Positions 37,431 to 54,760 of a stretch of 64,000 nucleotides of DNA are shown here, in pieces. The first letter of the stretch is position 1. The number at the start of each line of letters is the position of its first letter. The stretch is taken from the IMG/VR virus record IMGVR_UViG_3300048672_001051, positions 165,657-229,656 of that record. One strand, given 5' to 3'. A program made the position numbers and the translations under genes. The notes under the pieces are model-generated. The model saw nothing but the letters and a program-made list of their open reading frames with translations, searched no databases and was not told the origin of the DNA.

Positions 37431-37483
37431 GATTGTTTCCTCAATGGTTGTACAACAATGTTAGTATTTCGATCTTCATTACC

Positions 37484-37498
37484 GACCATTTTGCTTTT
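37484..37498 (-). promoter_or_regulatory. Phage promoter-like motif
   Basis: AAAAGCAAAATGGTCGGTAATGAAGAT. Confidence 0.7.
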
Positions 37499-38485: not shown

Positions 38486-38582
38486 CTTGTAATAAAGAGA
38501 TGACTGGAGGATGGGTTTTGTGTTACAGGTTTAGATAAACCACATGATGAATCTCTTTTAAGAAATCCATCAAGTTGTGTAT

Positions 38583-39240: not shown

Positions 39241-39550
39241 TGACTTTTACTCCGCCTAGAATACTGACCACAATAATGTTGACATGTAAGTCATCACCTT
39301 TGCGGTAAGTATTTACACGCCCTTTAATGGCCACTGTTAAACTTTTGTCCATAGTAGGACAGGCTCGTCGAAGATATTCCACAATGTTTCGAGGCAACGT
39401 TAATGGAATAGCATCTGTAACAATGCTAGTGCTGTGTTCATTAGAAGGCCTTTCACAATATAGTGTTGCCATCATTGAACCGTGAGCACCAATACCTACA
39501 AAGATTTTACCTGTGTTACCAGATAAGAAAACCGTATTTTCATTGGACAT
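39227..39550 (-). CDS. SSB-like OB-fold protein
   Basis: NTVFLSGNTG...LTVAIKGRVNTYR resembles the SSB OB fold; no acidic tail. Confidence 0.55.
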   Translation of the reverse strand: MSNENTVFLSGNTGKIFVGIGAHGSMMATLYCERPSNEHSTSIVTDAIPLTLPRNIVEYLRRACPTMDKSLTVAIKGRVNTYRKGDDLHVNIIVVSILGGVKVNGQT

Positions 39551-39616
39551 GATATACCTCGTTCAAAAAGGATTTTTGGTAAAGCTTATCCGGAGTTGAA
39601 CAAGCTTCTCTTTGAA

Positions 39617-39631
39617 GACCATTTTGCTTTT
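39617..39631 (-). promoter_or_regulatory. Phage promoter-like motif
   Basis: AAGATCAAAAGCAAAATGGTCT. Confidence 0.7.
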
Positions 39632-39668
39632 GATCTTCGTGTTATGTATCCTAATTGAATACATAACA

Positions 39669-39938
39669 TCAAGATTTAAGCTTACTTGCCTTCTTGTAGA
39701 GTTCTGTAAGAACTCTCACACGAACTAATTTTTCATTGTCAGTTTTTAAATCTAAAGACAACAAGTTGTCTATAGAGTTTCTATATGTTTGTAGTTGTTT
39801 AGCTTTCTTTTTTGATACGCTGTACATAAGTATTACCTTAATAATTAAATAGTTTAAGTTGTTTTTTAACTGACTGACGACATGTCTTAGCTTTACGCTT
39901 CTGATCAACATGGGTCTGTGCTTTGCAGCCTGCGGCAT
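39669..39938 (-). CDS. Small basic hypothetical protein
   Basis: Probable start MYSVSK after AAGG. Confidence 0.45.
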   Translation of the reverse strand: MPQAAKHRPMLIRSVKLRHVVSQLKNNLNYLIIKVILMYSVSKKKAKQLQTYRNSIDNLLSLDLKTDNEKLVRVRVLTELYKKASKLKS

Positions 39939-40172
39939 GCATATGTTTTTTCACAAGATTGTTCATAACAATTTCCTTTAAAGTGAAGTGGATTGAAGTA
40001 GACATAATACTTCAATCCACTATTCAGAGCAAGTTCTAAAAATGGTAAAACCATCCTGTCTTAATACCTAATGTATCGTAAGGTGGAATATAACCTTTAA
40101 ACATAGACGGGATGTAGTATGTTGGTTTCCGTTGACGTTTTAACGGAAACCATTCAATGTCTTTTTCAAGAG

Positions 40173-40868
40173 TCATTTAGTAGAACCTTCGGCATTCAAA
40201 AAGTTTTTAAACTTTTTATGCCAGTCTTCTGTTGATAGATTGAACACTGGAATATCAAAGTGTTCTGCCAGACAAATTTGCAATGAGCAGTTACGTGTTA
40301 ACTCACTGCAATCAGCAGCTACTGTTTCACCATAATATGTTGCACATAAAACTGCATCAATAGGTGAACACAGGTCAGTGCCTAAGATTTCGAATACACT
40401 ACGAATTGCATATTGTTGTGCATTAAAACCTAAGTCACGACCTTTAGCTAACATTGAAGCCCAACCCTTATGGTGTCTTTGGGCAAGTTTACGAGCTTCA
40501 TTCCACAGCTCAGTTTTGTACATCATGTGATATACAGCTGTGCTAGTGTCAAGAGTCCACCCATAATTATCATAAGGTAGGTATATGTTCAAAGCTGTTT
40601 TAGAAAGTTTACCTTCTGCAATAGCTTTTACAAATCCTGCTTGAAATGCTTCTTCTGCCCCTCTAGAATTTCCTGTGTTCAGAGTGACAGTCATGTTCAA
40701 CTCTGGTCGAGAATGTTCAAGAGTGGCTAACCAATAAGACAGTTTTCCAATATTAGTTATTACTTCAGGTTCTAATGTTTTAAGATTATCCGTACCCAAT
40801 CCTGCTAAAGTCAATTTCTTCATACAGTTTATCTTAACCTCTGCTGTTGTGAAAGGAATGAGTTTCAT
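40173..40868 (-). CDS. Second, diverged SLOG/DprA-like protein
   Basis: LNTGNSRGAEEAF, IYLP, RSVFEILG, IPVFNL; paralog of 31131-31736. Confidence 0.65.
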   Translation of the reverse strand: MKLIPFTTAEVKINCMKKLTLAGLGTDNLKTLEPEVITNIGKLSYWLATLEHSRPELNMTVTLNTGNSRGAEEAFQAGFVKAIAEGKLSKTALNIYLPYDNYGWTLDTSTAVYHMMYKTELWNEARKLAQRHHKGWASMLAKGRDLGFNAQQYAIRSVFEILGTDLCSPIDAVLCATYYGETVAADCSELTRNCSLQICLAEHFDIPVFNLSTEDWHKKFKNFLNAEGSTK

Positions 40869-40945
40869 GGCTGCCTACTGTTAGCAATTTAACGCGTAGA
40901 CAGCCATTACTTTTGAAACGTCTTTACTACCTTCGCGGAGCGGTT

Positions 40946-41332
40946 TTATCCAATGCGGAGTTGAGCTGCTAAGCGAGTTACAACTTCAGCATGTTCTTTT
41001 TTATTTTTATAGGCCGACCATACATTGTAAGGTCGTTGGCATTGTACACCACGCACATCGTTACCAGCATTATAGTAGTAAGCTGCTGAATCATTGTATA
41101 CAGTGATTTCATACTCTTCTAATACGAGAGATGTTTCACTGTCTCCTTCGCTGGCCAAGCGCTGATATACATCTGGCGCTACAGCAATTGTGATATCATC
41201 TGCTTCGACAATACCACCAAGTTGTTGTAACGCTAATGCTGAATAACCTGTGACTACATAGTCTTGGTCATCCATACCTTCGCCGATATTGAAAGCTAAA
41301 AGCTTTTGACGGATTTCACTAGGGTTCAACAT
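40946..41332 (-). CDS. Degenerate nucleotidyltransferase-like protein
   Basis: YVVTGYSALALQ...ADDITIAV resembles the GS...DxD pattern but is degenerate. Confidence 0.4.
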   Translation of the reverse strand: MLNPSEIRQKLLAFNIGEGMDDQDYVVTGYSALALQQLGGIVEADDITIAVAPDVYQRLASEGDSETSLVLEEYEITVYNDSAAYYYNAGNDVRGVQCQRPYNVWSAYKNKKEHAEVVTRLAAQLRIG

Positions 41333-41334
41333 GG

Positions 41335-41982
41335 TTAATTTCCTTTGACATAAGTGAATAAATCGCAGTCTAATAATAGACCAGCCTCAGTTTGACCTTT
41401 AAATCCAAAAGGATTCTCAGATCCGATTCCAATCACACTTACTTTAACGTTACCAGTGGCACGATCAACATAGATGTCACCTAATACAGGTTTCATCTCC
41501 GCGATTTGTTTAGCATATTGTTTTGAGCTAGCAGCCCAAGGCAATAACATATCAATATTATCTACACCCACACACTTGTGGTATTCTCGGTACTGATCAG
41601 TCACTGTATAAATAATACCACCAACAGTTGGTTGTACTTCCGTTGCTGTGTGATCAGCAACGTATGCAACATTCACCATAGCACCAATATTCACTAGGTG
41701 AGTTACATTATGCAGGTCTATTACAAGAGCCTTTGCAGCCGGTGTTCTACCAACAGCAATGAAGCCTTTCTTGCTAGCAAATGCTTGATGCTGATCTGTA
41801 ACCTGCCGAGCAAATAATGTACTAGGCATGCCTGTCTTTTCATTGCACTTTTTGCTATACCCAGTAAACATAACATTGTGCTTACCCACCAGTTTAGCTT
41901 TACAGAGAACAACAATACCATCGCGCGTATGCGCAATAGAGTTTGTTGTTCTATTCAGAGCTTCTTTAAATTCAAGAATCAT
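41335..41982 (-). CDS. Hypothetical protein
   Basis: GGAG SD. Confidence 0.65.
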   Translation of the reverse strand: MILEFKEALNRTTNSIAHTRDGIVVLCKAKLVGKHNVMFTGYSKKCNEKTGMPSTLFARQVTDQHQAFASKKGFIAVGRTPAAKALVIDLHNVTHLVNIGAMVNVAYVADHTATEVQPTVGGIIYTVTDQYREYHKCVGVDNIDMLLPWAASSKQYAKQIAEMKPVLGDIYVDRATGNVKVSVIGIGSENPFGFKGQTEAGLLLDCDLFTYVKGN

Positions 41983-42051
41983 GATTGTAACTCCAGTACT
42001 AAAGGAATGGTGGACTGTTTAGATGGGCACAGTCCTGAAGCCTTTATACGC

Positions 42052-42828
42052 TTAGATAAACTTTTTAAGCTTACGCTGAGCTTTTTCAAACAGTGTTTCT
42101 GGTGGCAATTTTGAAACGTGTTGCCACCAGTTTGCAGGTTGATGTTCAGGCTTCAATACATTGTGGCTATATAACAGATTGTTATTCCGTTGATTCGGCT
42201 TAACAACCCGACTGATGCATTCGCTGGCTACATAATATGCAGTAGTAAATACAATTGCCCGTACAGTATTTTTTTTGAAATCAGGCCACTTTTTAGCATT
42301 GTACACTGCCGCTAATCCGGCGATCATCAACTCTGCCTTCAAGCTGTAAGATACACAAGTAACTCCAGTAAGTAAGATTTCACTTGCTGAGGCACCTTGC
42401 CATTTCATAAGCAATGGGATAAGAACAGCATTGCGGCCAATGTTAAGGCCATGCGCACTTGCGTTATATTGAATCTTATCCAAGAACTTGTTCAGGCTAT
42501 CTTGCTGAACTTTAGTATTGCACGGATTAATTTTGTAGCGAAGTTTGTCTTCACCTAGCACTTCGCAATGGCAGTAAAATACTTCTAACCCTGCCTTGCG
42601 TAGCAGACCATAAGTCCGTACAAGTTGTAACTTGTTTTTGAACACAAATGGCGCAACAGCCTTAAAAACTTTCCCATCAACTGTCAGCGGATCAGTCACA
42701 GGCAACTCAATGTTACCAACAGTCAGATAGCCTTCAGTTGTGTCATACAACTGATCATTAACCAATACGAGTAGGGTTAAAGCGATATTTGTAGCAGTCA
42801 TCATACACCTCCAAGGTGTTTTGAACAA
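42052..42828 (-). CDS. Hypothetical protein
   Basis: Probable start MMTATN after GGAGG. Confidence 0.65.
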   Translation of the reverse strand: MFKTPWRCMMTATNIALTLLVLVNDQLYDTTEGYLTVGNIELPVTDPLTVDGKVFKAVAPFVFKNKLQLVRTYGLLRKAGLEVFYCHCEVLGEDKLRYKINPCNTKVQQDSLNKFLDKIQYNASAHGLNIGRNAVLIPLLMKWQGASASEILLTGVTCVSYSLKAELMIAGLAAVYNAKKWPDFKKNTVRAIVFTTAYYVASECISRVVKPNQRNNNLLYSHNVLKPEHQPANWWQHVSKLPPETLFEKAQRKLKKFI

Positions 42829-42843
42829 AGAAACAACGGGGAT

Positions 42844-43098
42844 TTACTGAGGAAATCGGTTTGTACGTCTACGGCGTCTTACAACTGTAGGTACGATAAC
42901 TTTTACGATGTCGTGCTTACAGCGCATGTAGTGGTGTTGACCACTCCACATATAGGAACGAGTAGTTCCATCATCAAACGACAACTTGATCGGATACCAT
43001 GGGATATCATGAGCAGTTACGCCAGTCACAATCAATGTTCGATCATCTTTTGTGACAACTGCATGCCCTACAGCTATGCTTTCTAACATAGTATTCAC
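42844..43098 (-). CDS. Hypothetical protein, Arg-rich C-terminus
   Basis: ORF in operon. Confidence 0.6.
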   Translation of the reverse strand: MNTMLESIAVGHAVVTKDDRTLIVTGVTAHDIPWYPIKLSFDDGTTRSYMWSGQHHYMRCKHDIVKVIVPTVVRRRRRTNRFPQ

Positions 43099-43192
43099 CT
43101 GTTCAAAAGGTTTAGGATTGAAAAACTGTTAACAGTTTATTGACTTATTAAGGTCACATGGATATAGGTTTCATTGTATCATCCTCATTACA

Positions 43193-43207
43193 GACCATTT
43201 TGCTTTT
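43193..43207 (-). promoter_or_regulatory. Phage promoter-like motif
   Basis: AAAAGCAAAATGGTCTGTAATGAGGAT. Confidence 0.75.
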
Positions 43208-43227
43208 AAGATCAATAGGTTAGCAAT

Positions 43228-43488
43228 TCAACGCCACTTATCAATCATGTTAATCAAATCAGTCTGACCACCATTGATGCGAATAAGTCTTGGGTGACTA
43301 CGATACAATTGATGGGCTGTGTGTGAACAAAACTTCACACACAGAATAACTACATCATAAGCACCTTTCTGAAGCTTAGATTGGTTGTCTTGCTGAGTTA
43401 CCCAAGTAAACTTCACTTTGCTACCAAACTTACGTGTTAGATCGTTTGCAGCTTTAGCTCTAACACCAATCACAAGAATGTGTTTCAT
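43228..43488 (-). CDS. DUF2325-like small protein
   Basis: ILVIG...YDVVILCVKFCSH pattern. Confidence 0.5.
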   Translation of the reverse strand: MKHILVIGVRAKAANDLTRKFGSKVKFTWVTQQDNQSKLQKGAYDVVILCVKFCSHTAHQLYRSHPRLIRINGGQTDLINMIDKWR

Positions 43489-43533
43489 AATCCCTCCATA
43501 CGGGGCCGTAGAAGCCCCGTAGAGCGACGTTAG

Positions 43534-43782
43534 TTAAGGGTGTAGACGTTGGTCCCATTCTGCAGTCTTGAGGGCTTCTTGAGCCTCTTCTGCGGTTTTC
43601 CAGTATTGTACGGATTCACGGCTAATAGGCTCACCTTCATGTTCAGTGCCTAAAAAGAAACCGTTATGACTCTTACACACTTTAAGTGGTAAGCGCATGT
43701 TTACGTATTGCAACGCAAGAATACCAATTGCCATAAGAACTGCTCCAAGAGTCCATGTTAAAAAAGAATACAACAATAACAA
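43534..43782 (-). CDS. Phage hypothetical protein
   Basis: LKVCKSHNGFFLG...PISRESVQYW pattern. Confidence 0.6.
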   Translation of the reverse strand: MLLLYSFLTWTLGAVLMAIGILALQYVNMRLPLKVCKSHNGFFLGTEHEGEPISRESVQYWKTAEEAQEALKTAEWDQRLHP

Positions 43783-43985
43783 TAGTCAGTTTACCGTCAT
43801 GACTAAGACCTACAGTATTATCATAAGGAGATTCCTTTAAGATGATGGTTGAAGTTGAGCCCATTGTTCTGTATTAGGTATGGGATTATCAAATCCGTGA
43901 AGATTTGAAAGCCTAAATTCACATTGCAATAATTCACATTAGCATGCGTATATATAACCAGTACATATACGCATTGTAATATAAA

Positions 43986-44513
43986 TTAATGATACTTCAT
44001 TACAATAAAGGGATAGTCTTTACGTTTGGCCTTACCAGCCCATAAAGAGTCCCCAATAGCTGATTCAACACCGATATCTGGTACCAGTGTTTCATCAACA
44101 ACAATGAAGAAACGATCATCACCTTGTTCAGTATTGAAGTCATACTCTGCATGCAATGTAGCACCCACAGAGGTAACAACATATACATCGTATTTCTTCA
44201 ACTCTTCAACACAGAACTCGAGCAACTCCCAACGAAGGGCGCCATATACTGTATGTTTGCTCCAACGATAGGTATAGTCTCGTGTTTTTTCATACGCATC
44301 TTCAGCACTCACGCCATACATGCCAGAAGGAACTGGATAACGTTTATCACCAGAGTGTTTAGGCCATTTCTTCATAACTTTAGCCAATAACTTGCCCATA
44401 TTTCCTCCGTGGCAAGTTATTGTTTCAGCAACTAAGTTACAGATTCCACTCTTTTTGTCAGGCCTGCGTTTAACATAGACTAAGCTCTCGCTTAATTCAT
44501 TTACAATATCCAT
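43986..44513 (-). CDS. Hypothetical phage protein
   Basis: WPKHSGDKRYPVP...YGALRWELL; AGGAG SD. Confidence 0.65.
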   Translation of the reverse strand: MDIVNELSESLVYVKRRPDKKSGICNLVAETITCHGGNMGKLLAKVMKKWPKHSGDKRYPVPSGMYGVSAEDAYEKTRDYTYRWSKHTVYGALRWELLEFCVEELKKYDVYVVTSVGATLHAEYDFNTEQGDDRFFIVVDETLVPDIGVESAIGDSLWAGKAKRKDYPFIVMKYH

Positions 44514-44523
44514 AACAATACTC

Positions 44524-44733
44524 CTATGGCAGATGAGGGACTACGATTGAACCTTTGTGAACATCTTTAAGGATATTCACAGCTTCATCCAGTGTGTGAA
44601 TATTAGCTTTGTGCTGATAATATTCTTCACCACCTTCATGTACAACAATAGTGAATCGACCACCTTGCCACAGGACAGTGGATTGTTCAACCCAAGCTAA
44701 GATGCAAGGTCTTACCGCTATTGATTCAAACAT
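44524..44733 (-). CDS. Hypothetical protein
   Basis: GGAG SD; overlap-coupled. Confidence 0.55.
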   Translation of the reverse strand: MFESIAVRPCILAWVEQSTVLWQGGRFTIVVHEGGEEYYQHKANIHTLDEAVNILKDVHKGSIVVPHLP

Positions 44734-44980
44734 TACTTTGCTCCAAGTGGTAGTGCATGTTTTCTAACAACATTGCACATTGAGACTCAGTAAGCTCAGG
44801 TTTAGCTTGGATGATGCGATGTTGACCGTTGCTCAAGTGTATTGCGATAGTCGCTAAACGCCGACCATCTTCGTAAATTGTGCCTGGAGTGTATTCCAGA
44901 GCAACAACATGTTGTGAAACAGGGCGCCAATAGAGCTGATCCTTGGCAAACTGCTTAAGCTCAATAATGAAATTGGACAT
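44726..44980 (-). CDS. Hypothetical protein
   Basis: GAGG SD. Confidence 0.6.
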   Translation of the reverse strand: MSNFIIELKQFAKDQLYWRPVSQHVVALEYTPGTIYEDGRRLATIAIHLSNGQHRIIQAKPELTESQCAMLLENMHYHLEQSNV

Positions 44981-44989
44981 AGTACCACC

Positions 44990-45403
44990 TCACTTGAAAA
45001 ATGATAACAAAGATTTTGGGATGTCGAGACTCTTGTGAGTGCTCAATACACTGTATAGCGAAGTATCCAGCGTGTGACCCCAGCCTGAAACAAAGTCATA
45101 TACAGCAATTTGCATACTGTATTTTTCCGCATTGATGAGGATGCCTGGACCCCCATCAGTCTCAACTACACCACGCAGTTGCTGATGTAGATATTTCAAA
45201 TCAATCTTCTTGTGCACCAATACAAGGATTGGATTCACACGGCTTGTCTTGATAAGAATACCGTACACCTCTAACGGCTGTGCCGAGTTGTCACGATCCT
45301 TAAAGCATTTAGCCTGAACATCAATAGTCAGGCGATCTGCATCTAAAAATAGTGTCGGAGGAACAGCATCAATAACAGCGTTAAATTCTTGCATGACAGT
45401 CAT
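44990..45403 (-). CDS. Hypothetical protein
   Basis: ORF in operon. Confidence 0.6.
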   Translation of the reverse strand: MTVMQEFNAVIDAVPPTLFLDADRLTIDVQAKCFKDRDNSAQPLEVYGILIKTSRVNPILVLVHKKIDLKYLHQQLRGVVETDGGPGILINAEKYSMQIAVYDFVSGWGHTLDTSLYSVLSTHKSLDIPKSLLSFFK

Positions 45404-45525
45404 CCTAAAATGAGATAGAGGGTTAATAACACACTCAGAACTATGAGTAGATTTCTGAATGTATTAAGCCGTTTTGCATGAGCATTGAGAATACGCTCAA
45501 GCTCTTTACTATAGTCGTCAGTCAT
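45400..45525 (-). CDS. 41-aa membrane-anchored protein (not in ORF track)
   Basis: AGGAG SD; MTDDYSKELER...LLIVLSVLLTLYLILG; ATGA overlap. Confidence 0.6.
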   Translation of the reverse strand: MTDDYSKELERILNAHAKRLNTFRNLLIVLSVLLTLYLILG

Positions 45526-45630
45526 CAGAGACTACTCCTAGTAGTTTTAAGAAAGGTTTACACCTTAAGATTATACTGGCAGGTGCTTACCAGTGAAGAC
45601 TATTATCATAGCTATTTAATCCTCATTAAA

Positions 45631-45651
45631 GACCATTTCGCTTGTGCTTTT
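45631..45651 (-). promoter_or_regulatory. Phage promoter-like motif (variant)
   Basis: AAAAGCACAAGCGAAATGGTCTTTAATGAGGAT. Confidence 0.65.
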
Positions 45652-45659
45652 GAACACAG

Positions 45660-46100
45660 TTATTCAGTGGTCGCGTAGGCAGACGGGATTTTGCTTAAGT
45701 CAATATTAACTTCGCGGCGCGGGTTTTGACTTTGAACTAGATGCCCTGTGCTGCTAATAGCGCTAGACGCCGCTTTAGCTTGCTTAATCACTGCAATAAA
45801 CTCTTCACGAGATAGTGTAGGGATTTCGCTAAGAAAGACAGGTGAGCCGTTATGGAATACACCTTGAATTACCTTAGAGCCGCCTAAGTAGTCTTGGCTT
45901 TGGGTAATACAGGTATAAGGCCCCTTGTTATACTTGTAGACCTTAACAAAGTTACTTGAATAAATAGCAGTAACTTTACTTGATCCAGTAATACCACAGA
46001 TGTCCACTACTGCGATATTTGTATCGTCAGTAGTTAAGTCATATGTGAGTACACTGGCAAAAATAGAAGCCAAAACAACACACAGTATTAGTTTAAACAT
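45660..46100 (-). CDS. Exported hypothetical protein
   Basis: N-terminal signal peptide; GAGGAG SD. Confidence 0.65.
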   Translation of the reverse strand: MFKLILCVVLASIFASVLTYDLTTDDTNIAVVDICGITGSSKVTAIYSSNFVKVYKYNKGPYTCITQSQDYLGGSKVIQGVFHNGSPVFLSEIPTLSREEFIAVIKQAKAASSAISSTGHLVQSQNPRREVNIDLSKIPSAYATTE

Positions 46101-46173
46101 GGTAAGTCTCCTCAGACTTGGTTGAAAGTTTATTCACATGTGGGAACTATAAAAATTCCCACAAATTAATAAA

Positions 46174-46665
46174 CTAAAAAGGTACTTCGAAGCCAGTGTA
46201 TTGACCTGCTTTAATAGCAGAGTCTAAATCACTGTAACGAAAATCTCTTACATGGTCGTTAGAAAATCCTTTACCAACAATCCAATAAATAGTTGGATAC
46301 GCTTGGATTAGAATTTTCTTTTCACCTGAATAGGCTTCGTATGCAAGGTATGCTTCGAAAGGCAGGTCGTACACAGTTAAGCTATTAGCTCTACGGTACT
46401 CAATAACTTCATTAAGCCTAGAGATCTCCAACACAATGCACTCTGCAGGGCTAGTCAAGTTATCAACTAGAGCATGTGACAGCATATGTATATGTTCTAA
46501 ACTACCCGAGCCCATGTACACTATCTGACCATCCTTATGTTCCATTTCATACATATCTGGAAAACAAGAAGATTCCCACTCAAGCTCACCTGCAATATCG
46601 TCGAAGTAAGCACTTGATTCACCTTCGTACATCAGGCTTATTTTAAAATCTGGATGTAAATTCAT
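46174..46665 (-). CDS. Hypothetical acidic protein
   Basis: AAGGAG SD. Confidence 0.65.
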   Translation of the reverse strand: MNLHPDFKISLMYEGESSAYFDDIAGELEWESSCFPDMYEMEHKDGQIVYMGSGSLEHIHMLSHALVDNLTSPAECIVLEISRLNEVIEYRRANSLTVYDLPFEAYLAYEAYSGEKKILIQAYPTIYWIVGKGFSNDHVRDFRYSDLDSAIKAGQYTGFEVPF

Positions 46666-46725
46666 AACAATGCTCCTTGGTTATAATTGTCGTTACTCCG
46701 GAATTAGAGTAACGACATGAAAAGG

Positions 46726-47217
46726 TTAGACCGATGGTTTGTGCAAAGACTTACGAATAGTCTTTGACACCTTAATTGCATCTTTACACCGTAAAAATAA
46801 CAACCCATCAGCTAAAAGCTGTTGATAACTGGGACAACTGGGATTGACTGTTAGCGTCTTGTAAAACGCATGTTGATCCCAGATCTCTTTTTGTACCAAA
46901 TGTAACACAGGCGTATAAACCTGTTTAATGGTACTGCCAAGCACCGTGTCAACACGAATCGGTGCAATAATAGAGCCGTTACCAACATCCATAGACTCCG
47001 GCTTTGTTGGATAACATACCAAGTCGCAGTGCCAAGAGATGTTAGCCATGAGGTATTCCATTGAAGTAACCTCTGTGAACTCTTTGTGCTTGCGTGGCTT
47101 AATCCACAGCTTGTGCTGCGAGCTCATCAACCAGAGGCCTATTTGGCCTCTGTGTTTTGCGAATGATTGACGCTTAGTTGCTTTCATAACAATACTCCAA
47201 AGTGCGACATTGCACAC
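46726..47217 (-). CDS. Hypothetical protein
   Basis: Probable start MKATK after GGAG. Confidence 0.6.
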   Translation of the reverse strand: MCNVALWSIVMKATKRQSFAKHRGQIGLWLMSSQHKLWIKPRKHKEFTEVTSMEYLMANISWHCDLVCYPTKPESMDVGNGSIIAPIRVDTVLGSTIKQVYTPVLHLVQKEIWDQHAFYKTLTVNPSCPSYQQLLADGLLFLRCKDAIKVSKTIRKSLHKPSV

Positions 47218-47427
47218 ATGTACGACCCATAATAAGAGTCGTACAAGTTTGAAATGTCAATCTTCTTCAAGATACAAATAGTCCATTGCGCTATTGTAGT
47301 CGATAACTACAGCTGCAATTTGACCATGAGTAAATTTACCTGAGAACATCTCAAATAAATCTTCTTCACAAGCACCGTTCTCCAGTGCTTGTATTATTTC
47401 TGAAGTGTCCATAGCGTCAGTCCTTTG

Positions 47428-47781
47428 CTAGTAGTCATCACCGTATTCGTTGTCTAGAGCCCTTCTATAACAAGGGTTACAGACTTCGTGTACTGGACCA
47501 CCACCTTCGCTAGGATCGCTGCGGAAATGAACGCGTAAGCCGCTCTTATGGCACCAATCACAAGTACCTGTAGGATTCTCATCCTCAGCCTCTTGCGCGG
47601 CCTTATAAGCGTCTACACACTCTTGACACATAGGGTGATACTCAGACCCCCAAGAGTCTGTCTCACCTACAAGAGTCAAAACCGCAGGCCGATTTTCATG
47701 CCCATCGGTGTGACATAGACTCCCCCACTGTTTTGCAACAGCAGACACTTCTATTAACATACCTGTGATATGTCTTCTCAT
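47428..47781 (-). CDS. Zn-finger (CxxC) protein
   Basis: CQEC, CDWC, CNPC. Confidence 0.65.
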   Translation of the reverse strand: MRRHITGMLIEVSAVAKQWGSLCHTDGHENRPAVLTLVGETDSWGSEYHPMCQECVDAYKAAQEAEDENPTGTCDWCHKSGLRVHFRSDPSEGGGPVHEVCNPCYRRALDNEYGDDY

Positions 47782-47990
47782 GCCTTAACTCCTTTAGCAA
47801 TGCATTGACAAGTATTATCTAGGTTGCCACAAAACTGGCAACCAGACTCGTAGATCGCAAGATGATAATTCAACTGCAACTCGAGCACTTCAATTTCTTG
47901 AAGTGCTTTCTCCCAAGCTGGCCCACACTCTTGCGGAAGCTTTTCTGCGAGGTCTGCAATCTTGGCCTCAATTTCATATGACGGATTCAT
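47778..47990 (-). CDS. Small Cys-rich protein
   Basis: CQFCG...CQC; AGGAG SD. Confidence 0.6.
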   Translation of the reverse strand: MNPSYEIEAKIADLAEKLPQECGPAWEKALQEIEVLELQLNYHLAIYESGCQFCGNLDNTCQCIAKGVKA

Positions 47991-48015
47991 ACTTAACTCC
48001 TAAGCGAGCTGATCC

Positions 48016-48411
48016 TCATAACAGACCATTTTGCTTTTGCTTTTGATTCGCTCCGGCGATACCAGTACAGTTATCCTGCGCTGCTTTAAGCCGCTGAATA
48101 TACACTGTTAAGTCCTGGCCGGTCTTTACGCGAACGTTATTAATAAACAAGGCGATAACACCTTGAGCGAATGAGATGCCTAGCCAGACATTAGCCTTCT
48201 TAGCCAAATAGGCTTCGTCAGAAGGTTTGATGCCAGCCGCTTCCAGCACCAAGTCAGGCGTTACGCCGCTACTAGAGGGCTCGAACGCACCGAAGAGTAT
48301 CGGCACAAAATCATTCGCGCCATACTCTTCGGTGGTATGAGAATCTGCAAAGCATACCATTATGGTGCTCCTAATAATTAACCTTGAAGTGTTTAGCTTC
48401 AAGTGCCGCAA
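48016..48411 (-). CDS. Hypothetical protein
   Basis: Probable start MVCFAD after AGGAG; C-terminus runs through the promoter-like motif. Confidence 0.55.
   Translation of the reverse strand: MRHLKLNTSRLIIRSTIMVCFADSHTTEEYGANDFVPILFGAFEPSSSGVTPDLVLEAAGIKPSDEAYLAKKANVWLGISFAQGVIALFINNVRVKTGQDLTVYIQRLKAAQDNCTGIAGANQKQKQNGLL
48024..48044 (-). promoter_or_regulatory. Phage promoter-like motif
   Basis: AAAAGCAAAAGCAAAATGGTCTGTTATGAGGAT. Confidence 0.75.
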
Positions 48412-48676
48412 TCACATCCGCTTTGTACTGCGGATGATCTTCGGCAGAGTCACTGATGTTCACCTCTTGAGTAGTAGAGGTGAAATGATTCTGCCACGAA
48501 TCATCTGGCCACTGGGCCTGTGGATCGTTACAAGCTGAGTCGTGGCAAGATGCCGACCATAGCTCGTAGCAAGCACTGGCCACTTCGGACGGCGTACCAC
48601 CGTCCGCTATTATTACATCCAAAGCCTTCTTAGCTTTGGCATTTTGATTCTGATGGTGAGTCAGGTTAATTTTCAT
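48371..48676 (-). CDS. Hypothetical protein
   Basis: GAGG SD. Confidence 0.6.
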   Translation of the reverse strand: MKINLTHHQNQNAKAKKALDVIIADGGTPSEVASACYELWSASCHDSACNDPQAQWPDDSWQNHFTSTTQEVNISDSAEDHPQYKADVIAALEAKHFKVNY

Positions 48677-48740
48677 GATGAATCCTCAAGAGCTTTTAGA
48701 AGGGAGCTCTTATTATAAACCCTAAAATCCGAGTGCAGCG

Positions 48741-49004
48741 TTAGTTCAGAAGAAGAAACTCTGGGTCTACTAATTCTTCGATGTAGACCTCCAAAGTTTC
48801 TTCCGCTTTATACCGGCGCACGATGTCGTGCTTGATCCCTGAAGCGACTACCAGAAAATGGTAGTCCCGCTCAAATATCAGGAATGTGCCATCGACGTTT
48901 ATGTCGATGTCGCGCGCTTTAAATGCAGCGCGCAGTTCTTGCACTTGTTGCTCGTTCATGTATTTTCTCCTTATTAAGATGGGCATGACCCCGAATAATA
49001 ACAA
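48741..49004 (-). CDS. Hypothetical protein
   Basis: Probable start MNEQQ after TAAGGAG. Confidence 0.6.
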   Translation of the reverse strand: MLLFGVMPILIRRKYMNEQQVQELRAAFKARDIDINVDGTFLIFERDYHFLVVASGIKHDIVRRYKAEETLEVYIEELVDPEFLLLN

Positions 49005-49015
49005 ACCTCATAACA

Positions 49016-49030
49016 GACCATTTTGCTTTT
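49016..49030 (-). promoter_or_regulatory. Phage promoter-like motif
   Basis: AAGATCAAAAGCAAAATGGTCTGTTATGAGG. Confidence 0.75.
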
Positions 49031-50148: not shown

Positions 50149-50334
50149 TTAGGGATAAACACGAACCCCTAACATGCAAGCCTTCACCTCGATCTCGCGA
50201 GGTGAAGGAGGTAATTGCGTGAACTGGGCGGGGTGGACTTCCCCCAAGACCAGTTCGACCATTGCGTCATACTCGGCCTGACGCGCGGCCTTTTCAGACT
50301 TGCGGGAAGCCTGAAAGAGATCTATGCTGAACAT
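50149..50334 (-). CDS. Hypothetical protein
   Basis: AGGAG SD; downstream of a promoter-like motif. Confidence 0.6.
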   Translation of the reverse strand: MFSIDLFQASRKSEKAARQAEYDAMVELVLGEVHPAQFTQLPPSPREIEVKACMLGVRVYP

Positions 50335-50370
50335 AGAGCACTCCTAAGAAAGAGGACAATCCTCACAAAA

Positions 50371-50391
50371 GACCATTTTGCTTTTGCTTTT
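50371..50391 (-). promoter_or_regulatory. Phage promoter-like motif
   Basis: AAAAGCAAAAGCAAAATGGTCTTTTGTGAGGAT. Confidence 0.75.
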
Positions 50392-50541
50392 GGTCTCGCG
50401 GAGGTACGAATTGGTGAGTTGGTTACAAGTTAGATTTCCCGTCTAACCAACTCACCGCACTATTGTTTCTGCTTCGGATCTTGATCTTGATCTTGATCCT
50501 AGTAGAAACAACCTACAGGGTTTGTGGCAACCCTCGTAACA

Positions 50542-50612
50542 GACCATTTTGCTTTTGCTTTTGCTTTGGCTTTTGCTTTTGCTTTTGCTTTTGCTTTTGC
50601 TTTTGCTTTTGC
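50542..50612 (-). promoter_or_regulatory. Phage promoter-like motif with 10 tandem AAAAGC hexamers
   Basis: Plus strand GACCATTTT then (GCTTTT)x10 at 50551-50610, one copy GCTTTG. Confidence 0.75.
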
Positions 50613-50649
50613 GGAGTGTAGAGAAATTCTACACTCCACCAATAACCCC

Positions 50650-51078
50650 TTAAAGGACAGTTAGATTGCACGGAATAACTGCTAACAATTTAGTCAGCTC
50701 CTCCTTATTTAGAACTGTGTCTCCATTTTTCTTCCTCCAATCATTAGCAGACCAGTACTTGACGTATTTTAGAACCATCTTAAGGTAATCTACCTCTTTA
50801 GCTGGGCCTGACAATATCAAATCGACAGGTCTAGACCTGTCTTTAATTAACCCTAACGAACTAGTTAAGGTGAGGATTGCCTTTGCAGATGGCAATCCTG
50901 TGCTAAATATTTCTAGCTGTTTATGTTTACTCATAGAGAGACCTTGGTAATCTGCCGTCAACAATACGTCTGACTTGTAAGGCACTACTACCTTTTTGTA
51001 GTCCTTGTCTTGTAGGGGTACAGACAATTCTAAATGAATTGTAACTGTGTTATCTGCAGTTTTACTTGATAAGTTCAT
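50650..51078 (-). CDS. Degenerate RNase H-like protein
   Basis: YVKYWSANDWRKKNGDTVLNKEE resembles the RNase HI WxxxGWxxxxxxPVKNxDL segment; catalytic acids not evident. Confidence 0.45.
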   Translation of the reverse strand: MNLSSKTADNTVTIHLELSVPLQDKDYKKVVVPYKSDVLLTADYQGLSMSKHKQLEIFSTGLPSAKAILTLTSSLGLIKDRSRPVDLILSGPAKEVDYLKMVLKYVKYWSANDWRKKNGDTVLNKEELTKLLAVIPCNLTVL

Positions 51079-51124: not shown

Positions 51125-54100
51125 TTAAGCTTGTAAAGCTTGGATTAAACGGTACATCATTGACTCTGTATACATGTCGTATACTTTGCCATCAATGACC
51201 GCACCTTCAGCATCTTTCAACAAGACAAAGTTACTTGTCAATGGTGATTGATCGCTGAACATCAACGCATCGAGGGATGGTGCGCTCAAGTGCAAGGCAG
51301 CTACTTGACGCATCACTGCCATGAACTTAGCGCAGAACTGGTCTACGCTCATGTTCAATGAGCTGAAGTTGAACAGCAAGCCATTTGTGAAAACATCCAC
51401 AACAGCCTCTTTAGCCGCAGCTAGCCGGGCGATATACTCATCACGGCTTTCATCTTTTTTCTGCAAGATGAAACCAGGACGTATTATCTCGCTGACAGCC
51501 AGCTTCGAGCCAAGGCTTGAATGCTTCATGCCGTTCATAGCCTCTTCCTGCACCAACACACCAATTACGTATGCAACGGTGTTAAAGAATTCCTCATGCA
51601 TAGCTGCAGGAATGTCCGCCAATCCTTTACCATCCATACGTACAGAAGTATGGTATGTGAAGAATCGTTGTAGGTTCTTGGTATAAGAACCTACGTTGGC
51701 TTTCGCATCAGCAGATTCCTTGATAGTTGCAAACAACTCAACCCAAGAGAACTGATTAACGCTTGCGCCGCCAAAGCCAAGAGCGTTCATCTCTTTGGCC
51801 AGGTAGTTTTGATGCCACTTAGCAGCGAAGTACTTATCATCAAGCACCTTAGCTTCAAAAGTGTTCAACTTCACTTTACCATGTGAAGTCAAGCGAACCA
51901 AGTCACCGTCTGCATCATTTTGCAATGATAACAAGTAGTTAGCTGGCGCGAACACCGCGCAGTTGAAGATCTCAGCCATGTCTTTGTTCAACATGTCTTC
52001 TTCTACGAAGTTGGCCTCGGCTTCAGCTGCGATGCGCTTAGCTTTCAGGTAAGCGTTGCTGTCACGGCCTTGACCAGCTTTTTCAAACTTGGCGTTGGCC
52101 CGGTTAAGCTGTTGCAGCGCGTGGTGACGCTTAGGCAGCTTACTGTGTACCATCATACCAGTTTGTAGCTCTGGCATGATTACAGGATGCTTGGTAGCCA
52201 GCATTGTGCCACCATTACGCATGGCCAGGCACCACAGCTCATTGGCTTTAGAAGCCCAAGGAGCGCAGATCAAAGCGCCATACATACCCTCAACTTTCAG
52301 GCGACCCAACTGCTTACCCAAGATCTCGCATTGGGTGTATTGGAGCATGTTGACCGAGAAGTTCTCGACAAATGCTCCGATTGTTGGTTTGGCTTTTAAG
52401 TTCAAGGTGTACTCATCAACCTCATACTGACCAACCAGACCGCGAACGGCCTTGAGGAAGGTGTTAAAGTACCCTTGACTTTGAATCATTGTTGCATAGG
52501 CAGATGTTTCAGCCATATTCCCACAAAGGATGCGTTGCCCTGTTAAGTAGGTCAGTGGTGTACCTGCCTTGTCAGTCAACTCAACCCAACGTACATTAGG
52601 ATCGTTGATACCTAATACACAGGCAACGTCCACAAAGAACGCGCGGTGAACATACCCTTCACCTAATGTGTCTAGGTCTAGCCCATATGTTGCCACCAAA
52701 CGGGCGATCTTACCAACAACAGAAGCTAGTGGTAGTGTATATACCCCAGCGGCTGTTTTGTCGCTCAGACGACCCTGCACCCAATCTAGGGCCATGTTGA
52801 CGTCGTCTTTCTTGTCAGAATTAAGCTCGAGAGACATTGCATGTTGCAGCATGTCTTGAACCATCTGTTGGCCGTGAGTGGTACGCATCATGTCGAACTC
52901 GCTCGACACGACGTTAACCACTTTTGGTTTGCGAGTGATAACACCAGACTCGCGCAACTCACGTAGCGCATCTGGCAGTGGAGCCATAGAGCCAGCGTCT
53001 GCCAACTCTGCGACTTTGTTAAACACGACAGCTATCAGCAATGGATCATCGCCAATGATGTCATGTTTCTTATACGCTGCTTCCAACAACTTAGCAGCGT
53101 TATCAATGTAGCTGTTGACCACAAAGTCACGGTCAACAAACTTATAACCATGACTAATTGTGTAATGGTTAGTCGCAACCATCTGTACATCGTTCAGCAC
53201 ACAGACTTCGACCTCAAGTCCGTTGATCTCAACAACTTCCCAAATTGAGTTCAACTCGGTTGGATCGTTGATGATGTCCATAACTTCGCAGTTAGGATGT
53301 TTGGCTTGATACAGACCAGCCAAACCACCTTTATATGAAGCTTTTGAAGCCAGAGATACGCCAGCATCAGCCAAGTCTTTATCGACAAAACCTGCCCATG
53401 AGAGGGTTGACTTAATCAAGCCTTCGGTATTATCGCCAACAGCACGACAGAAACCAACTGTCAGCATTGTATCGCTGTCAGCCAAAATATTACCTGCCAC
53501 AAGAGCGTTACGCAGCTCAGTGGCAGTCTTAAGGTTGCGCTTGGCAACAGCTTTAGCCTTACCGGCTTTAGACGCCTTTACAGCGTCGTAGGCAGCTGTT
53601 GCAGCGTCAAGTGCTACGTTAGGGTCACGCAACACCCAAACCTCACCAAAGGCGAATCCGACGCCGTCCTTATTGCACAGCTTCTCAAAGCGAGAAGCTG
53701 TGTGCTTGATGCTCAAGGCTGACAGCAGTGAACCATCAGCTTGTTCAGTCAGCATGTAGCCTAACTGTTCATGCTCACGAATGTAACCGTCAGCAGCGTG
53801 GCTGCCAGATACCAAGCCATAAACACCTGGCTTGAAATGCTCCAGATACTGGTTTACAGGGTACTTACTGTAAACCATTGGATGTGAAACGGGTGTAACA
53901 GCACCGTTCGCTGCGCGAAGTACGAGGTGCTTCGCTGGATCAGCGATCAGCGCTTCGTAAGACAGGTTGCCAGCGCGCAGGAGGATCAATTTCTCGATCC
54001 AACTCAAGCTCATGAGCTTGATATTAAAGCCACGAGCACCAGTGTCGTGAAACACATGGATACGGCTCAGCGCATCAACCACTTCAGCAGTGGTATTACT

Positions 54101-54760
54101 GCTAGTGATCTTGACACTAGCTTGAACAAAGCCTAGCACAGATTCAACTGCACTGTACTTCATTGCAGTGGCCTTCATGCCATGACCTAGGCGGATATTA
54201 ACACCACCTTTGTCAAACTGAGGCTTTTCCGCAATGTTACGGCGGAAAGCCTCAGCCATCGGCTGAATTGGGTACGAGTCCAATTGGCCCGCGCACTTCA
54301 CAGCCCACTCTATTAGAGCGAGCTTGTCATCTGTCAAGCCGTGACCGAAATAGACCAACACTTTGGCGATGGAGTTAGAGTACTCCAGGCCACGGGTGTT
54401 GACGAATATTGAATAAAGCTCAAGCATCGCCCGAGCCTTGTTCAAACCTCCGACAACTTCTAGGTCCTCCTGATCCAATTCCACTTTCGTGAAACCAGAT
54501 ACAGCAGGGGCGTTAATGACACGCAAGATGTCACCCTTCGCAACGGCCATTGATTCTACATAGTAGAACTCTTTGGCCATGTGCTGGATGGTGGCATCCA
54601 GCTTATCGCGGTCGACAAGGTGTGGGTACACCTCAGCACGGTCTTTTTTGGAGCCGGAAACATAGGCCAAAACAGCGGCCTTGTTGGACCAGTTCAGGAC
54701 TGATTGATACATAGCTGTGGTCTTCATGGTTGAAGTTCCTTTGGTGGTTGAGTTAGTCAT
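51125..54760 (-). CDS. Single-chain two-barrel DNA-directed RNA polymerase 1 (YonO/QDE-1-like fold, putative)
   Basis: 1211 aa. Catalytic-type QNDADGD, upstream ATKHP (RxP-like), beta-like RAVG..GLIKS, C-terminal KANVG and LVQEEAMNGMKH shared with 17155-20778. Confidence 0.75.
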   Translation of the reverse strand: MTNSTTKGTSTMKTTAMYQSVLNWSNKAAVLAYVSGSKKDRAEVYPHLVDRDKLDATIQHMAKEFYYVESMAVAKGDILRVINAPAVSGFTKVELDQEDLEVVGGLNKARAMLELYSIFVNTRGLEYSNSIAKVLVYFGHGLTDDKLALIEWAVKCAGQLDSYPIQPMAEAFRRNIAEKPQFDKGGVNIRLGHGMKATAMKYSAVESVLGFVQASVKITSSNTTAEVVDALSRIHVFHDTGARGFNIKLMSLSWIEKLILLRAGNLSYEALIADPAKHLVLRAANGAVTPVSHPMVYSKYPVNQYLEHFKPGVYGLVSGSHAADGYIREHEQLGYMLTEQADGSLLSALSIKHTASRFEKLCNKDGVGFAFGEVWVLRDPNVALDAATAAYDAVKASKAGKAKAVAKRNLKTATELRNALVAGNILADSDTMLTVGFCRAVGDNTEGLIKSTLSWAGFVDKDLADAGVSLASKASYKGGLAGLYQAKHPNCEVMDIINDPTELNSIWEVVEINGLEVEVCVLNDVQMVATNHYTISHGYKFVDRDFVVNSYIDNAAKLLEAAYKKHDIIGDDPLLIAVVFNKVAELADAGSMAPLPDALRELRESGVITRKPKVVNVVSSEFDMMRTTHGQQMVQDMLQHAMSLELNSDKKDDVNMALDWVQGRLSDKTAAGVYTLPLASVVGKIARLVATYGLDLDTLGEGYVHRAFFVDVACVLGINDPNVRWVELTDKAGTPLTYLTGQRILCGNMAETSAYATMIQSQGYFNTFLKAVRGLVGQYEVDEYTLNLKAKPTIGAFVENFSVNMLQYTQCEILGKQLGRLKVEGMYGALICAPWASKANELWCLAMRNGGTMLATKHPVIMPELQTGMMVHSKLPKRHHALQQLNRANAKFEKAGQGRDSNAYLKAKRIAAEAEANFVEEDMLNKDMAEIFNCAVFAPANYLLSLQNDADGDLVRLTSHGKVKLNTFEAKVLDDKYFAAKWHQNYLAKEMNALGFGGASVNQFSWVELFATIKESADAKANVGSYTKNLQRFFTYHTSVRMDGKGLADIPAAMHEEFFNTVAYVIGVLVQEEAMNGMKHSSLGSKLAVSEIIRPGFILQKKDESRDEYIARLAAAKEAVVDVFTNGLLFNFSSLNMSVDQFCAKFMAVMRQVAALHLSAPSLDALMFSDQSPLTSNFVLLKDAEGAVIDGKVYDMYTESMMYRLIQALQA

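What the first reader, a model, noticed from the sequence alone, without database searches (positions are those of the whole stretch)
50341..50640. Hexamer-expanded tandem promoter pair right after RNAP1: tunable promoter or replication origin
Two motif copies lie ~170 bp apart, with 2 and 10 AAAAGC hexamers. Between them is (GATCTT)x3 plus GATCCT at ~50477-50500, an expansion of the other upstream element of the motif, and a long hairpin (GGTGAGTTGGTTA...TAACCAACTCACC). No ORF lies between them. By analogy, the T7 primary origin has two tandem phage promoters just after gene 1. The hexamer number (1, 2 or 10 across sites) could set promoter strength and vary by slippage.
Basis: partly seen in the sequence, partly recalled or inferred. 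Interest (0 to 1): 0.65.

Follow-up and report, generated by a model that had tools for sequence, protein, structure and literature searches.

The report
Repeat-expanded tandem phage promoter pair
In an uncultured 230-kb freshwater phage, the first two of ten copies of a phage-specific promoter-like motif sit 171 bp apart just downstream of the phage's own RNA polymerase gene, and one has had part of the motif amplified into ten hexamer copies; this is real and unusual, but nothing tested supports calling it a replication origin.

Summary

The first two copies are 171 bp apart with no credible ORF between them. The upstream copy carries (AAAAGC)10 and the downstream one (AAAAGC)2. Between them, three perfect hairpins use nearly every base, one built around (GATCAA)3GATCC. 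This 140 bp holds three of the genome's eight perfect short tandem arrays.

A relative (RNAP 90% identical, neighbouring gene only 52%) keeps the upstream hairpin, with compensatory changes, followed at once by the hexamer array.

Best reading: tandem promoters for the phage RNAP, opening its regulon, with a slippage-expanded upstream element and a structured non-coding leader or small RNA.

Origin reading: not supported. There is no AT-rich stretch, the GC-skew minimum lies 9 kb away, and tandem promoter pairs recur three times in a distant relative. It is not excluded.

Copy-number variation could not be tested, because the only data served were contigs, which break inside the array.

The parts
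51125..54760 (-). RNAP1 gene (P0001, 1211 aa): single-chain two-barrel RNA polymerase with an NDADGD metal-binding motif
50650..51078 (-). 142-aa gene of unknown function, last gene of the RNAP1 operon
   Evidence: ORF list. Its only homologue is the 135-aa gene in the same position in relative L008, at 52% identity.
50614..50638 (-). Hairpin 1: 10-bp stem, 5-nt loop, ending 2 nt before the hexamer array; probably an RNA 3'-end or boundary element of the RNAP1 operon
   Evidence: Fold. It is conserved in L008 with one double compensatory change (A-T to G-C) and two changes to G-U wobbles that pair only in the minus-strand RNA, while the adjacent gene DNA is about 60% identical. No U-tract follows it.
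50551..50610 (-). (AAAAGC)10 array (7 perfect units, CAAAGC, 2 perfect units): tandem expansion of the upstream sub-element of the promoter motif
   Evidence: It is the longest short-period array in the 230-kb genome. Logan contigs of the source run break here. Relative L008 has at least 3 units at the same place.
50528..50556 (-). Promoter-like motif copy P-a (proximal AAAAGC, AAAATGGTCT, GTTACGAGGGTT); no ORF for 206 nt downstream
   Evidence: Perfect core match. Alignment of the 10 sites. ORF distances.
50517..50534 (-). Small hairpin (6-bp stem AGGGTT/AACCCT) overlapping the downstream edge of P-a
   Evidence: Folds.
50463..50511 (-). Hairpin enclosing (GATCAA)3GATCC (plus strand (GATCTT)3GATCC, 50477-50500), closed by TTGTTTCT/AGAAACAA and GGATC/GATCC
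   Evidence: It is the densest GATC cluster in the genome. The sequence after the repeat resembles the start of the motif (GATC-CG-AAGCA-G-AAA) but lacks TGGTCT (direct reading).
50413..50456 (-). Hairpin 4: perfect 13-bp stem with an inner alternative stem; no U-tract after it
   Evidence: It is unchanged in the X2 relative contig. It resembles the U-tract-less hairpins that precede other promoter copies.
50357..50391 (-). Promoter-like motif copy P-b with (AAAAGC)2, 35 nt upstream of the start codon of the 61-aa gene, which has an AGGAG ribosome-binding site
   Evidence: There is no length change in the X2 contig covering 50243-50483.
50149..50334 (-). 61-aa gene, first gene of the motif-driven block
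   Evidence: An 89% identical homologue sits in unrelated ~49-kb phage contigs that lack the motif, so this is a real, mobile gene.
24597..49029 (-). Span holding the eight other copies of the motif (cores at 49015, 48023, 45630, 43192, 39616, 37483, 29078, 24597), with 1 or 2 hexamers each

Best explanation
The region is the head of the regulon of the phage's own two-barrel RNA polymerase (RNAP1). The operon that encodes RNAP1 ends with a conserved RNA hairpin. Immediately after it come two tandem RNAP1 promoters, 171 bp apart.

The 28-nt promoter starts with AAAAGC followed by the near-copy AAAATG, so it is slippage-prone. Replication slippage has amplified that sub-element to 2 copies at three promoters and to 10 at the first one. 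A neighbouring GATCAA element has been amplified in the same way. Because the promoter-proximal unit stays intact, the promoter should stay functional.

The array probably acts as a graded upstream element: extra partial RNAP contact sites, or a spacer that sets distance to the boundary hairpin. It may also be nearly neutral.

Transcripts from the first promoter start with a roughly 125-170 nt ORF-less segment of three stable hairpins. That segment is either a structured leader that is processed or stabilising, or a separate small RNA ended by the 13-bp hairpin. The second promoter drives the first protein gene.

Shown: the sequence anatomy, the motif distribution, the RNAP fold, and conservation of the hairpin plus array in a relative. 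Inferred: that the motif is a promoter, that RNAP1 reads it, that slippage made the arrays, and any effect on promoter strength.
For: - Motif: 10 sites, one strand only, all between genes, confined to the 26 kb that begins after the RNAP1 operon, none elsewhere in 230 kb. A contiguous 28-nt conserved block lies 10-105 nt upstream of ORFs, most with a ribosome-binding site.
- RNAP1 is a two-barrel RNAP by fold, with conserved catalytic motifs across 40 homologues.
- The precedent of two single-chain two-barrel RNAPs, each with its own promoter motif and genome block, is Thermus phage P23-45 (PMC10770324). A second divergent RNAP-like gene is present here.
- Hexamer number is 1, 2 or 10, and the hexamer is part of the conserved motif.
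- The locus is the genome's only cluster of short tandem arrays.
- In relative L008, the hairpin (with compensatory changes) and the start of the array (at least 3 units) are exactly conserved, although the adjacent gene is 52% identical in protein and about 60% in DNA.
- In distant relative L074, 11 copies of a different motif lie downstream of the RNAP module. They include three tandem pairs 65-127 nt apart with short structured ORF-less spacers, and the first two sites after the RNAP module are one of those pairs.
- The inter-promoter interval folds far better than shuffles (z -7.4).
Against: - There are no transcript data, so neither promoter function nor start sites are shown.
- Copy-number variation was not observed. 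Contigs cannot show it, and the 2-copy promoter is stable between two samples.
- Only one close relative exists, and its contig stops inside the array.
- The hairpins are perfect inverted repeats, so they fold equally on either strand and as DNA. An RNA-level role for the interval is therefore not demonstrated.
- 6-bp-phased A-tracts give no net DNA bend (inference from helical repeat), so a classical curved upstream element is unlikely.
Confidence: 0.6

Rival explanations
1. Transcription-activated replication origin, as at the T7 primary origin. RNAP1 transcription from the first promoter opens the duplex, the displaced strand folds into the three hairpins, and the RNA or a primase starts DNA synthesis. 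The arrays and the GATC cluster would be origin accessory elements.
For: - Tandem phage-RNAP promoters lie just downstream of the RNAP gene, as in T7, whose primary origins are phi1.1A and phi1.1B (PMC8373140).
- An ORF-less transcribed interval made entirely of hairpins.
- The densest GATC cluster in the genome.
- RNase H genes sit next to RNAP homologues in two distant relatives, which hints at R-loop biology in this group.
Against: - No AT-rich unwinding stretch: the interval is 45.5% GC, the array is 35% GC, and the local AT minima lie elsewhere.
- The RNAP is not T7-like.
- The hexamers are contiguous 6-mers, not spaced iterons.
- No Dam or N6 methyltransferase is encoded.
- Polymerase and helicase genes are about 140 kb away.
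- The GC-skew minimum and an AT-rich repeat-laden divergent region lie at 59.3-59.85 kb.
- Tandem promoter pairs occur three times in 5 kb in relative L074, so the arrangement is not unique to one site.
Confidence: 0.12
2. The first promoter exists to make an abundant small structured non-coding RNA of about 115-130 nt (three hairpins, ended by the 13-bp hairpin), early in RNAP1-dependent transcription. The hexamer array boosts its promoter. This is compatible with the best explanation as a sub-case.
For: - A promoter with no ORF for 206 nt.
- A compact three-hairpin fold, z -7.4.
- The other transcription units in the block are also bounded by U-tract-less hairpins placed just before the next promoter, so P-a to hairpin 4 looks like a gene-less unit.
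- In L074, tandem pairs likewise enclose a short recurring hairpin element.
Against: - No Rfam family matches.
- No covariation data exist. X2 is 97% identical and L008 lacks the interval.
- No U-tract terminator.
- The fold is equally good on the other strand and as DNA.
Confidence: 0.2
3. A DNA-level boundary element unrelated to transcription initiation: a packaging (pac-like) site built on GATC hexamers as in P1, or an injection-stop signal at the end of the first-entering segment as in T5.
For: - A cluster of GATC-containing hexamers plus inverted repeats at the boundary between the RNAP1 operon and the rest of the genome.
- The RNAP1 operon lies 5-13 kb from the end of the record.
Against: - There is only one GATC cluster, whereas P1 pac has two flanking a cleavage region (from memory).
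- No Dam gene.
- The record has no terminal repeats, so the physical ends are unknown.
- The hexamer array is plainly derived from the promoter motif.
Confidence: 0.04
4. A neutral by-product: a promoter duplication followed by decay and runaway slippage, with no function beyond the second promoter.
For: - The sequence after the GATC repeat looks like a decayed third motif start (direct reading).
- Microsatellites homogenise themselves, so perfect units do not prove selection.
Against: - The hairpin-array junction is conserved in a relative whose adjacent gene has diverged to 52%.
- The interval is almost entirely perfect hairpins, which is not expected of decaying sequence.
Confidence: 0.1

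Closest known systems
Thermus phage P23-45 transcription scheme (virion RNAP gp96 and non-virion RNAP gp64; PMC10770324)
   Different: There is no detectable sequence similarity. The motif is different. This phage is a 230-kb freshwater jumbo phage. No repeat-expanded promoter appears in the passages of that paper I read.
T7 promoters phi1.1A/phi1.1B, the primary origin of replication (PMC8373140)
   Same: Two tandem phage-RNAP promoters downstream of the RNAP gene, at the start of the RNAP-dependent genes.
   Different: T7 RNAP is a Pol-I-like single-subunit enzyme, whereas this one is two-barrel. The AT-rich segment of the T7 origin (recalled from the T7 literature) has no counterpart here. 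A gene and a hairpin lie between the RNAP gene and the promoters. The hexamer and GATC arrays and the three hairpins have no T7 counterpart that I know of.
Bacterial simple-sequence-repeat promoter 'rheostats' and contingency loci (e.g. the H. pylori sabA T-tract upstream of the promoter, PMC4081817; H. influenzae intergenic SSRs, PMC12721329)
   Same: A slippage-prone repeat directly upstream of a promoter core that could grade output by copy number.
   Different: Those are host sigma-70 promoters in bacteria, with demonstrated length polymorphism. Here the repeat unit is part of a phage-RNAP promoter motif, and polymorphism has not been shown.
Tandem promoter pairs in distant relative L074 (uncultured phage, RNAP 29% identical)
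   Same: The first sites after the RNAP module are a tandem pair. The spacers are short, ORF-less and structured.
   Different: A different motif (AATTTAAATGCTTTGAG), no microsatellite expansion, and three pairs rather than one.

Membership tests
Phage-RNAP-specific promoter class | A conserved 20-30 bp motif repeated in intergenic regions, co-oriented with the downstream genes | tested here: met
   10 sites with a 28-nt conserved block, all on the minus strand and between genes, 10-105 nt upstream of ORFs.
Phage-RNAP-specific promoter class | The phage encodes its own RNA polymerase | tested here: met
Phage-RNAP-specific promoter class | Transcription starts mapped at the motif, or in-vitro initiation by the phage RNAP | not testable with these tools
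   No RNA run holds the sequence.
T7-type primary origin | One or two phage-RNAP promoters | tested here: inconclusive
   Two promoter-like motif copies are present, but promoter function is inferred.
T7-type primary origin | An AT-rich region immediately downstream of the promoters (feature recalled from the T7 literature) | tested here: not met
   The interval 50385-50540 is 45.5% GC and fully paired in hairpins. The local AT minima are at 49.07 and 49.6 kb.
T7-type primary origin | A T7-like (Pol-I-fold) single-subunit RNAP | tested here: not met
   No Pfam hit. The fold is two-barrel.
T7-type primary origin | Replication initiation mapped to the site | not testable with these tools
   Only contig-level depth was available: 149 against 132 on the two sides, which is uninformative.
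Iteron/DnaA-type origin | Spaced iterons of roughly 17-22 bp plus an AT-rich unwinding element and an adjacent initiator gene | tested here: not met
   The repeats are contiguous 6-mers. There is no AT-rich element. The neighbouring genes have no family hits.
Dam/GATC-controlled element (oriC, P1 oriR or P1 pac type) | A GATC cluster together with a GATC methyltransferase | tested here: inconclusive
   The cluster is present, 4 GATC in 22 bp. No Dam, D12 or N6_N4 methyltransferase is in the phage genome. The host is unknown.
SSR contingency locus / promoter rheostat | A simple-sequence repeat within or directly upstream of a promoter | tested here: met
   (AAAAGC)10 abuts the motif core.
SSR contingency locus / promoter rheostat | Copy-number polymorphism within or between populations | tested here: inconclusive
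   Logan contigs break in the array in the source run. The relative's contig ends 19 nt into its array. The P-b repeat is unchanged in run X2.
SSR contingency locus / promoter rheostat | Expression depends on copy number | not testable with these tools
   This needs a reporter series.
Known RNA families (ribozymes, sRNAs) | A covariance-model match | tested here: not met
   Rfam at E up to 1 over 49-52 kb returns only spurious miRNA rows. The whole window at E up to 0.01 returns only a hammerhead at 58.8 kb.

The most novel reading that the evidence does not exclude
The ORF-less first-promoter unit is a transcription-primed replication origin, or an RNAP-loading site, of a jumbo phage that uses a two-barrel RNAP. 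Its firing strength would be set by a hypermutable hexamer array, making it a phage 'contingency' origin or promoter that generates population heterogeneity in early timing.
Probability: 0.1. Interest if true: 0.75.

Novelty: new variant of a known kind. Interest (0 to 1): 0.45.

Why it matters
If the motif is confirmed, it defines the promoter of a previously undescribed family of single-chain two-barrel phage RNA polymerases: about 40 representative clusters in metagenomes and none among 50,697 deposited phage records. That would give a ready-made orthogonal RNAP and promoter pair.

The ten-copy expansion of a promoter sub-element is a natural experiment on how such an enzyme reads upstream DNA. 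It would also be the first example I know of where a microsatellite sits in a phage-RNAP promoter. If its length varies in populations, it would be a phage counterpart of bacterial contingency loci.

The origin idea, if true, would extend transcription-primed replication beyond T7-like enzymes, but the present evidence does not favour it.

Tried and rejected
- **Relatives in viral and metagenome collections.** IMG/VR and JGI scans with the RNAP protein, a two-sequence alignment and DNA patterns returned nothing related. The 48 single 16-mer hits are at the rate I would expect by chance, and L057 is unrelated.
- **Deposited phages.** tblastn and megablast against deposited phage records found no match.
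- **Raw-read check of repeat number.** Only Logan contigs were served, and they stop at the array. The single read-laying run is now used.
- **Homologues of the 61-aa gene.** The aim was to find the far side of the relative's array. The search found the gene only in unrelated phages that lack the motif.
- **Homologues of the 142-aa gene.** Only L008 was found.
- **Coding potential of the array.** The (KQ)n and (AK)n frames were rejected: no ATG, no ribosome-binding site.
- **Sigma-70 promoters or intrinsic terminators in the interval.** There is no sigma-70-like promoter. The only terminator-like hit is a weak 5-bp stem just downstream of P-b.
- **A supposed second 'pre-early promoter' motif (ATGCACTGATGA, 58764 and 59290).** I first read it as a promoter. 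It is a type II hammerhead ribozyme core, so I dropped that reading.
- **IHF-site reading of the GATCAA repeat.** Rejected by eye: the TT part of the recalled IHF consensus is missing.
- **Hammerhead or other ribozyme in the three-hairpin interval.** There is no CUGAUGA core and no Rfam hit.
- **Distant RNAP loci L066 and L068.** No comparable repeat was found. L068 has a 14-mer twice, 39 nt apart, at the RNAP stop, but it is too short to judge.

Full report
**Context.** The window is the last 64 kb of a 229,656-bp IMG/VR virus record, with CheckV completeness 98% and no terminal repeats. The sequence was found in freshwater metagenome runs.

**Observation.**
- The core AAAGCAAAATGGTCT lies at 50370-50384 and 50541-50555, 171 bp apart.
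- Ten hexamers (7 perfect, one CAAAGC, 2 perfect) occupy 50551-50610, and two occupy 50380-50391.
- (GATCTT)3GATCC lies at 50477-50500.
- The hairpin with 13-bp arms lies at 50413-50456.
- The only open frames between the motif copies are repeat artefacts, (KQ)n and (AK)n, without ATG or ribosome-binding site.

Additional anatomy:
- A 10-bp-stem hairpin (50614-50638) ends 2 nt before the array.
- The GATC repeat is enclosed in its own hairpin (50463-50511).
- A small hairpin (50517-50534) follows the first motif.
- The 136-nt interval therefore folds into three consecutive hairpins that use nearly every base. The fold is -53.6 kcal/mol against -28.5 for shuffles, z -7.4. It is equally good on the other strand (z -6.6) and as single-stranded DNA (z -6.2).

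None of this is chance:
- The genome has only eight perfect arrays of period 4-9 with at least three copies, and three of them lie in these 140 bp.
- The four GATC in 22 bp are the densest such cluster in 230 kb.

One correction: the site is not directly after the RNAP gene. A 142-aa gene (50650-51078) intervenes.

**The motif as a promoter class.** With up to 3 mismatches the core gives 13 hits against 4.8 +/- 1.95 in shuffles. Across the whole genome, the ten true sites are all on the minus strand and all within window 24,597-50,555. Aligned, they share a contiguous 28-nt block, atcAAAAGC-AAAATGGTCT-gTnATGAGGat. Each site is between genes and 10-105 nt upstream of an ORF, mostly with a ribosome-binding site. 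Most are preceded by a stable hairpin without a U-tract. Hexamer number is 10, 2, 1, 2, 2 (imperfect), 1, 1, 1, 1, 1 from the first site onward. Several sites have GATC(A/T) just upstream of the hexamer.

A second 1207-aa ORF (17155-20778, SDCDGD motif) aligns to the family profile over the catalytic barrel and bridge helix, with probability 84% and E 7.7e-6. The layout is an RNAP gene in a first operon, followed by a block of genes each preceded by a private motif. This matches Thermus phage P23-45, where a virion RNAP transcribes pre-early genes, including the second RNAP's gene, and each enzyme has its own motif (PMC10770324). That RNAP1 reads this motif is an inference from adjacency and that precedent.

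**Comparative evidence.** Close relatives are almost absent.
- **L008.** This 4355-bp Logan contig encodes an RNAP 90% identical and a 135-aa homologue (52% identical) of the 142-aa gene. Its DNA is about 60% identical across the 3' part of that gene. The hairpin is nevertheless kept, with one double compensatory change and two changes to G-U wobbles that pair only in the minus-strand RNA. It is followed by the identical GC plus AAAAGC units. The contig ends 19 nt into the array, so at least three units are present. This supports a sense-strand RNA role for hairpin 1 and persistence of the array at this junction.
- **Source run.** Logan contigs stop on both sides of 50541-50618, which is the loop expected at k = 31. 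Copy number and heterogeneity therefore cannot be read from them.
- **Run X2.** A 241-nt contig from a second sample covers 50243-50483 with six substitutions and no length change, so the two-copy promoter is stable there.
- **L074.** In this distant relative (RNAP 29% identical), a different 17-mer, AATTTAAATGCTTTGAG, occurs 11 times, all co-oriented and all downstream of the RNAP module. It forms three tandem pairs 65-127 nt apart, each enclosing a short recurring hairpin element. The first two sites after the module are one such pair. Tandem promoter pairs with short structured ORF-less spacers thus look like a habit of phages with this RNAP family.
- **L072 and L073.** Here the RNAP gene is followed by at least 590 nt without an ORF. 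That stretch holds a 34-bp inverted repeat and two copies of a 17-mer.

**Origin hypothesis.** T7's primary origins are phi1.1A and phi1.1B, and an RNAP-dependent promoter is essential to every T7 origin (PMC8373140). From my own knowledge of the T7 literature, an AT-rich segment follows those promoters.
- Here the inter-promoter interval is 45.5% GC and fully paired. The array is 35% GC. The local AT minima lie at 49.07 and 49.6 kb.
- The repeats are contiguous 6-mers, not iterons.
- The phage encodes no Dam-type methyltransferase.
- The Pol A and DnaB-like genes lie at about 71 and 78 kb of the genome.
- The cumulative GC-skew minimum coincides with the divergent, AT-rich, repeat-bearing region at window 59.3-59.85 kb, although skew follows gene orientation here.

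The features of an origin that I could test are thus not met, and the tandem arrangement is not unique within the family. The hypothesis is unsupported but not excluded. An ORF-less, transcribed, hairpin-rich interval could stabilise an R-loop, and RNase H genes sit beside RNAP homologues in L071 and L074.

**Mechanism proposed.**
- Shown: the anatomy, the motif distribution, the RNAP fold, and conservation of the hairpin-array junction.
- Inferred: the RNAP1 operon ends at hairpin 1. The first RNAP1 promoter follows at once. Its upstream sub-element, AAAAGC next to the near-copy AAAATG, has expanded by slipped-strand mispairing. The proximal unit and the core stay intact, so initiation is preserved. 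The extra units may provide additional weak contacts or change spacing to the boundary hairpin, or they may be nearly neutral. 6-bp phasing of A-tracts gives no net bend (inference from helical repeat).
- The first promoter yields a three-hairpin leader or a discrete small RNA. The second promoter serves the 61-aa gene, which is a real mobile gene found 89% identical in unrelated phages.
- The sequence after the GATC repeat resembles the start of the motif but lacks TGGTCT, which suggests a decayed third copy and a history of local duplication.

**Verdict.** The promoter-pair reading is well supported indirectly. Tunability is untested. The origin reading is unsupported. The feature is a new variant of a known kind: a phage-RNAP promoter class carrying a microsatellite expansion.

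Noticed in passing
window 2892-16230 (minus strand): 31 of 38 consecutive ORFs of about 120-160 aa hit one another by blastp (20-52% identity, median 29%). This is one very large tandem paralogue array in a 26-29% GC segment.
   Followed up: partly
window 17155-20778 (minus strand): A second, very divergent two-barrel RNAP-like gene (1207 aa, SDCDGD motif). It aligns to the RNAP1 family profile over the catalytic barrel and bridge helix (probability 84%, E 7.7e-6). It lies just beyond the last copy of the promoter motif.
   Followed up: partly
window 58753-58830 (minus strand) and about 59285-59370 (minus strand): A type II hammerhead ribozyme sits inside the RNAP1 operon (Rfam RF02276, 35.4 bits against a gathering score of 37, E 0.0018). 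A second copy shares the 24-nt block and shows GAAAC, GUC and CUGAUGA by eye, but Rfam did not pick it up. Relatives L071 and L066 also have sub-threshold hammerhead hits in intergenic regions.
   Followed up: partly
window 50416-50425, 50444-50453 and 59305-59314: The 10-mer GAGTTGGTTA occurs only three times in the 230-kb genome: in both arms of the 13-bp hairpin and in stem I of the second hammerhead-like copy. I have no explanation for this.
   Followed up: partly
window 59250-59856: A 600-bp divergent intergenic region at the strand switch and the cumulative GC-skew minimum. It has a very AT-rich half and tandem repeats (ATTTTTTAAAGGA x2, AAATAATAxCTATAT x3). This is a more classical candidate for an origin or an early promoter region.
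   Followed up: partly
L074 10859-15943: Eleven copies of AATTTAAATGCTTTGAG lie downstream of a distant RNAP homologue. They form three tandem pairs, with a recurring AAGGCAGCAGTTTCCTT hairpin about 25-30 nt downstream of several copies.
   Followed up: partly
L072 13372-13961 and L073 9670-10233: At least 590 nt without an ORF follow a distant RNAP homologue. The stretch holds a 34-bp inverted repeat enclosing about 245 nt and two copies of AAACATTGGAGAGGGGT. Contigs from two samples both end here.
   Followed up: no
L071 4221-7167 and L074 9354-10730: Genes with an RNase H domain lie directly downstream of RNAP homologues in two distant relatives.
   Followed up: no
window 55218-57404; L072 7784-9964: A gene of 726-728 aa with no family hit immediately precedes the RNAP gene both in the window and in a 29%-identical relative. 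I judged this conserved synteny by size and position only.
   Followed up: no
window 50149-50334; L058-L064: The 61-aa gene after the second promoter is 89% identical to a gene in unrelated ~49-kb phage contigs that carry a GpA-type terminase and a Prim-Pol. This indicates recent exchange of a small gene between very different phages.
   Followed up: partly
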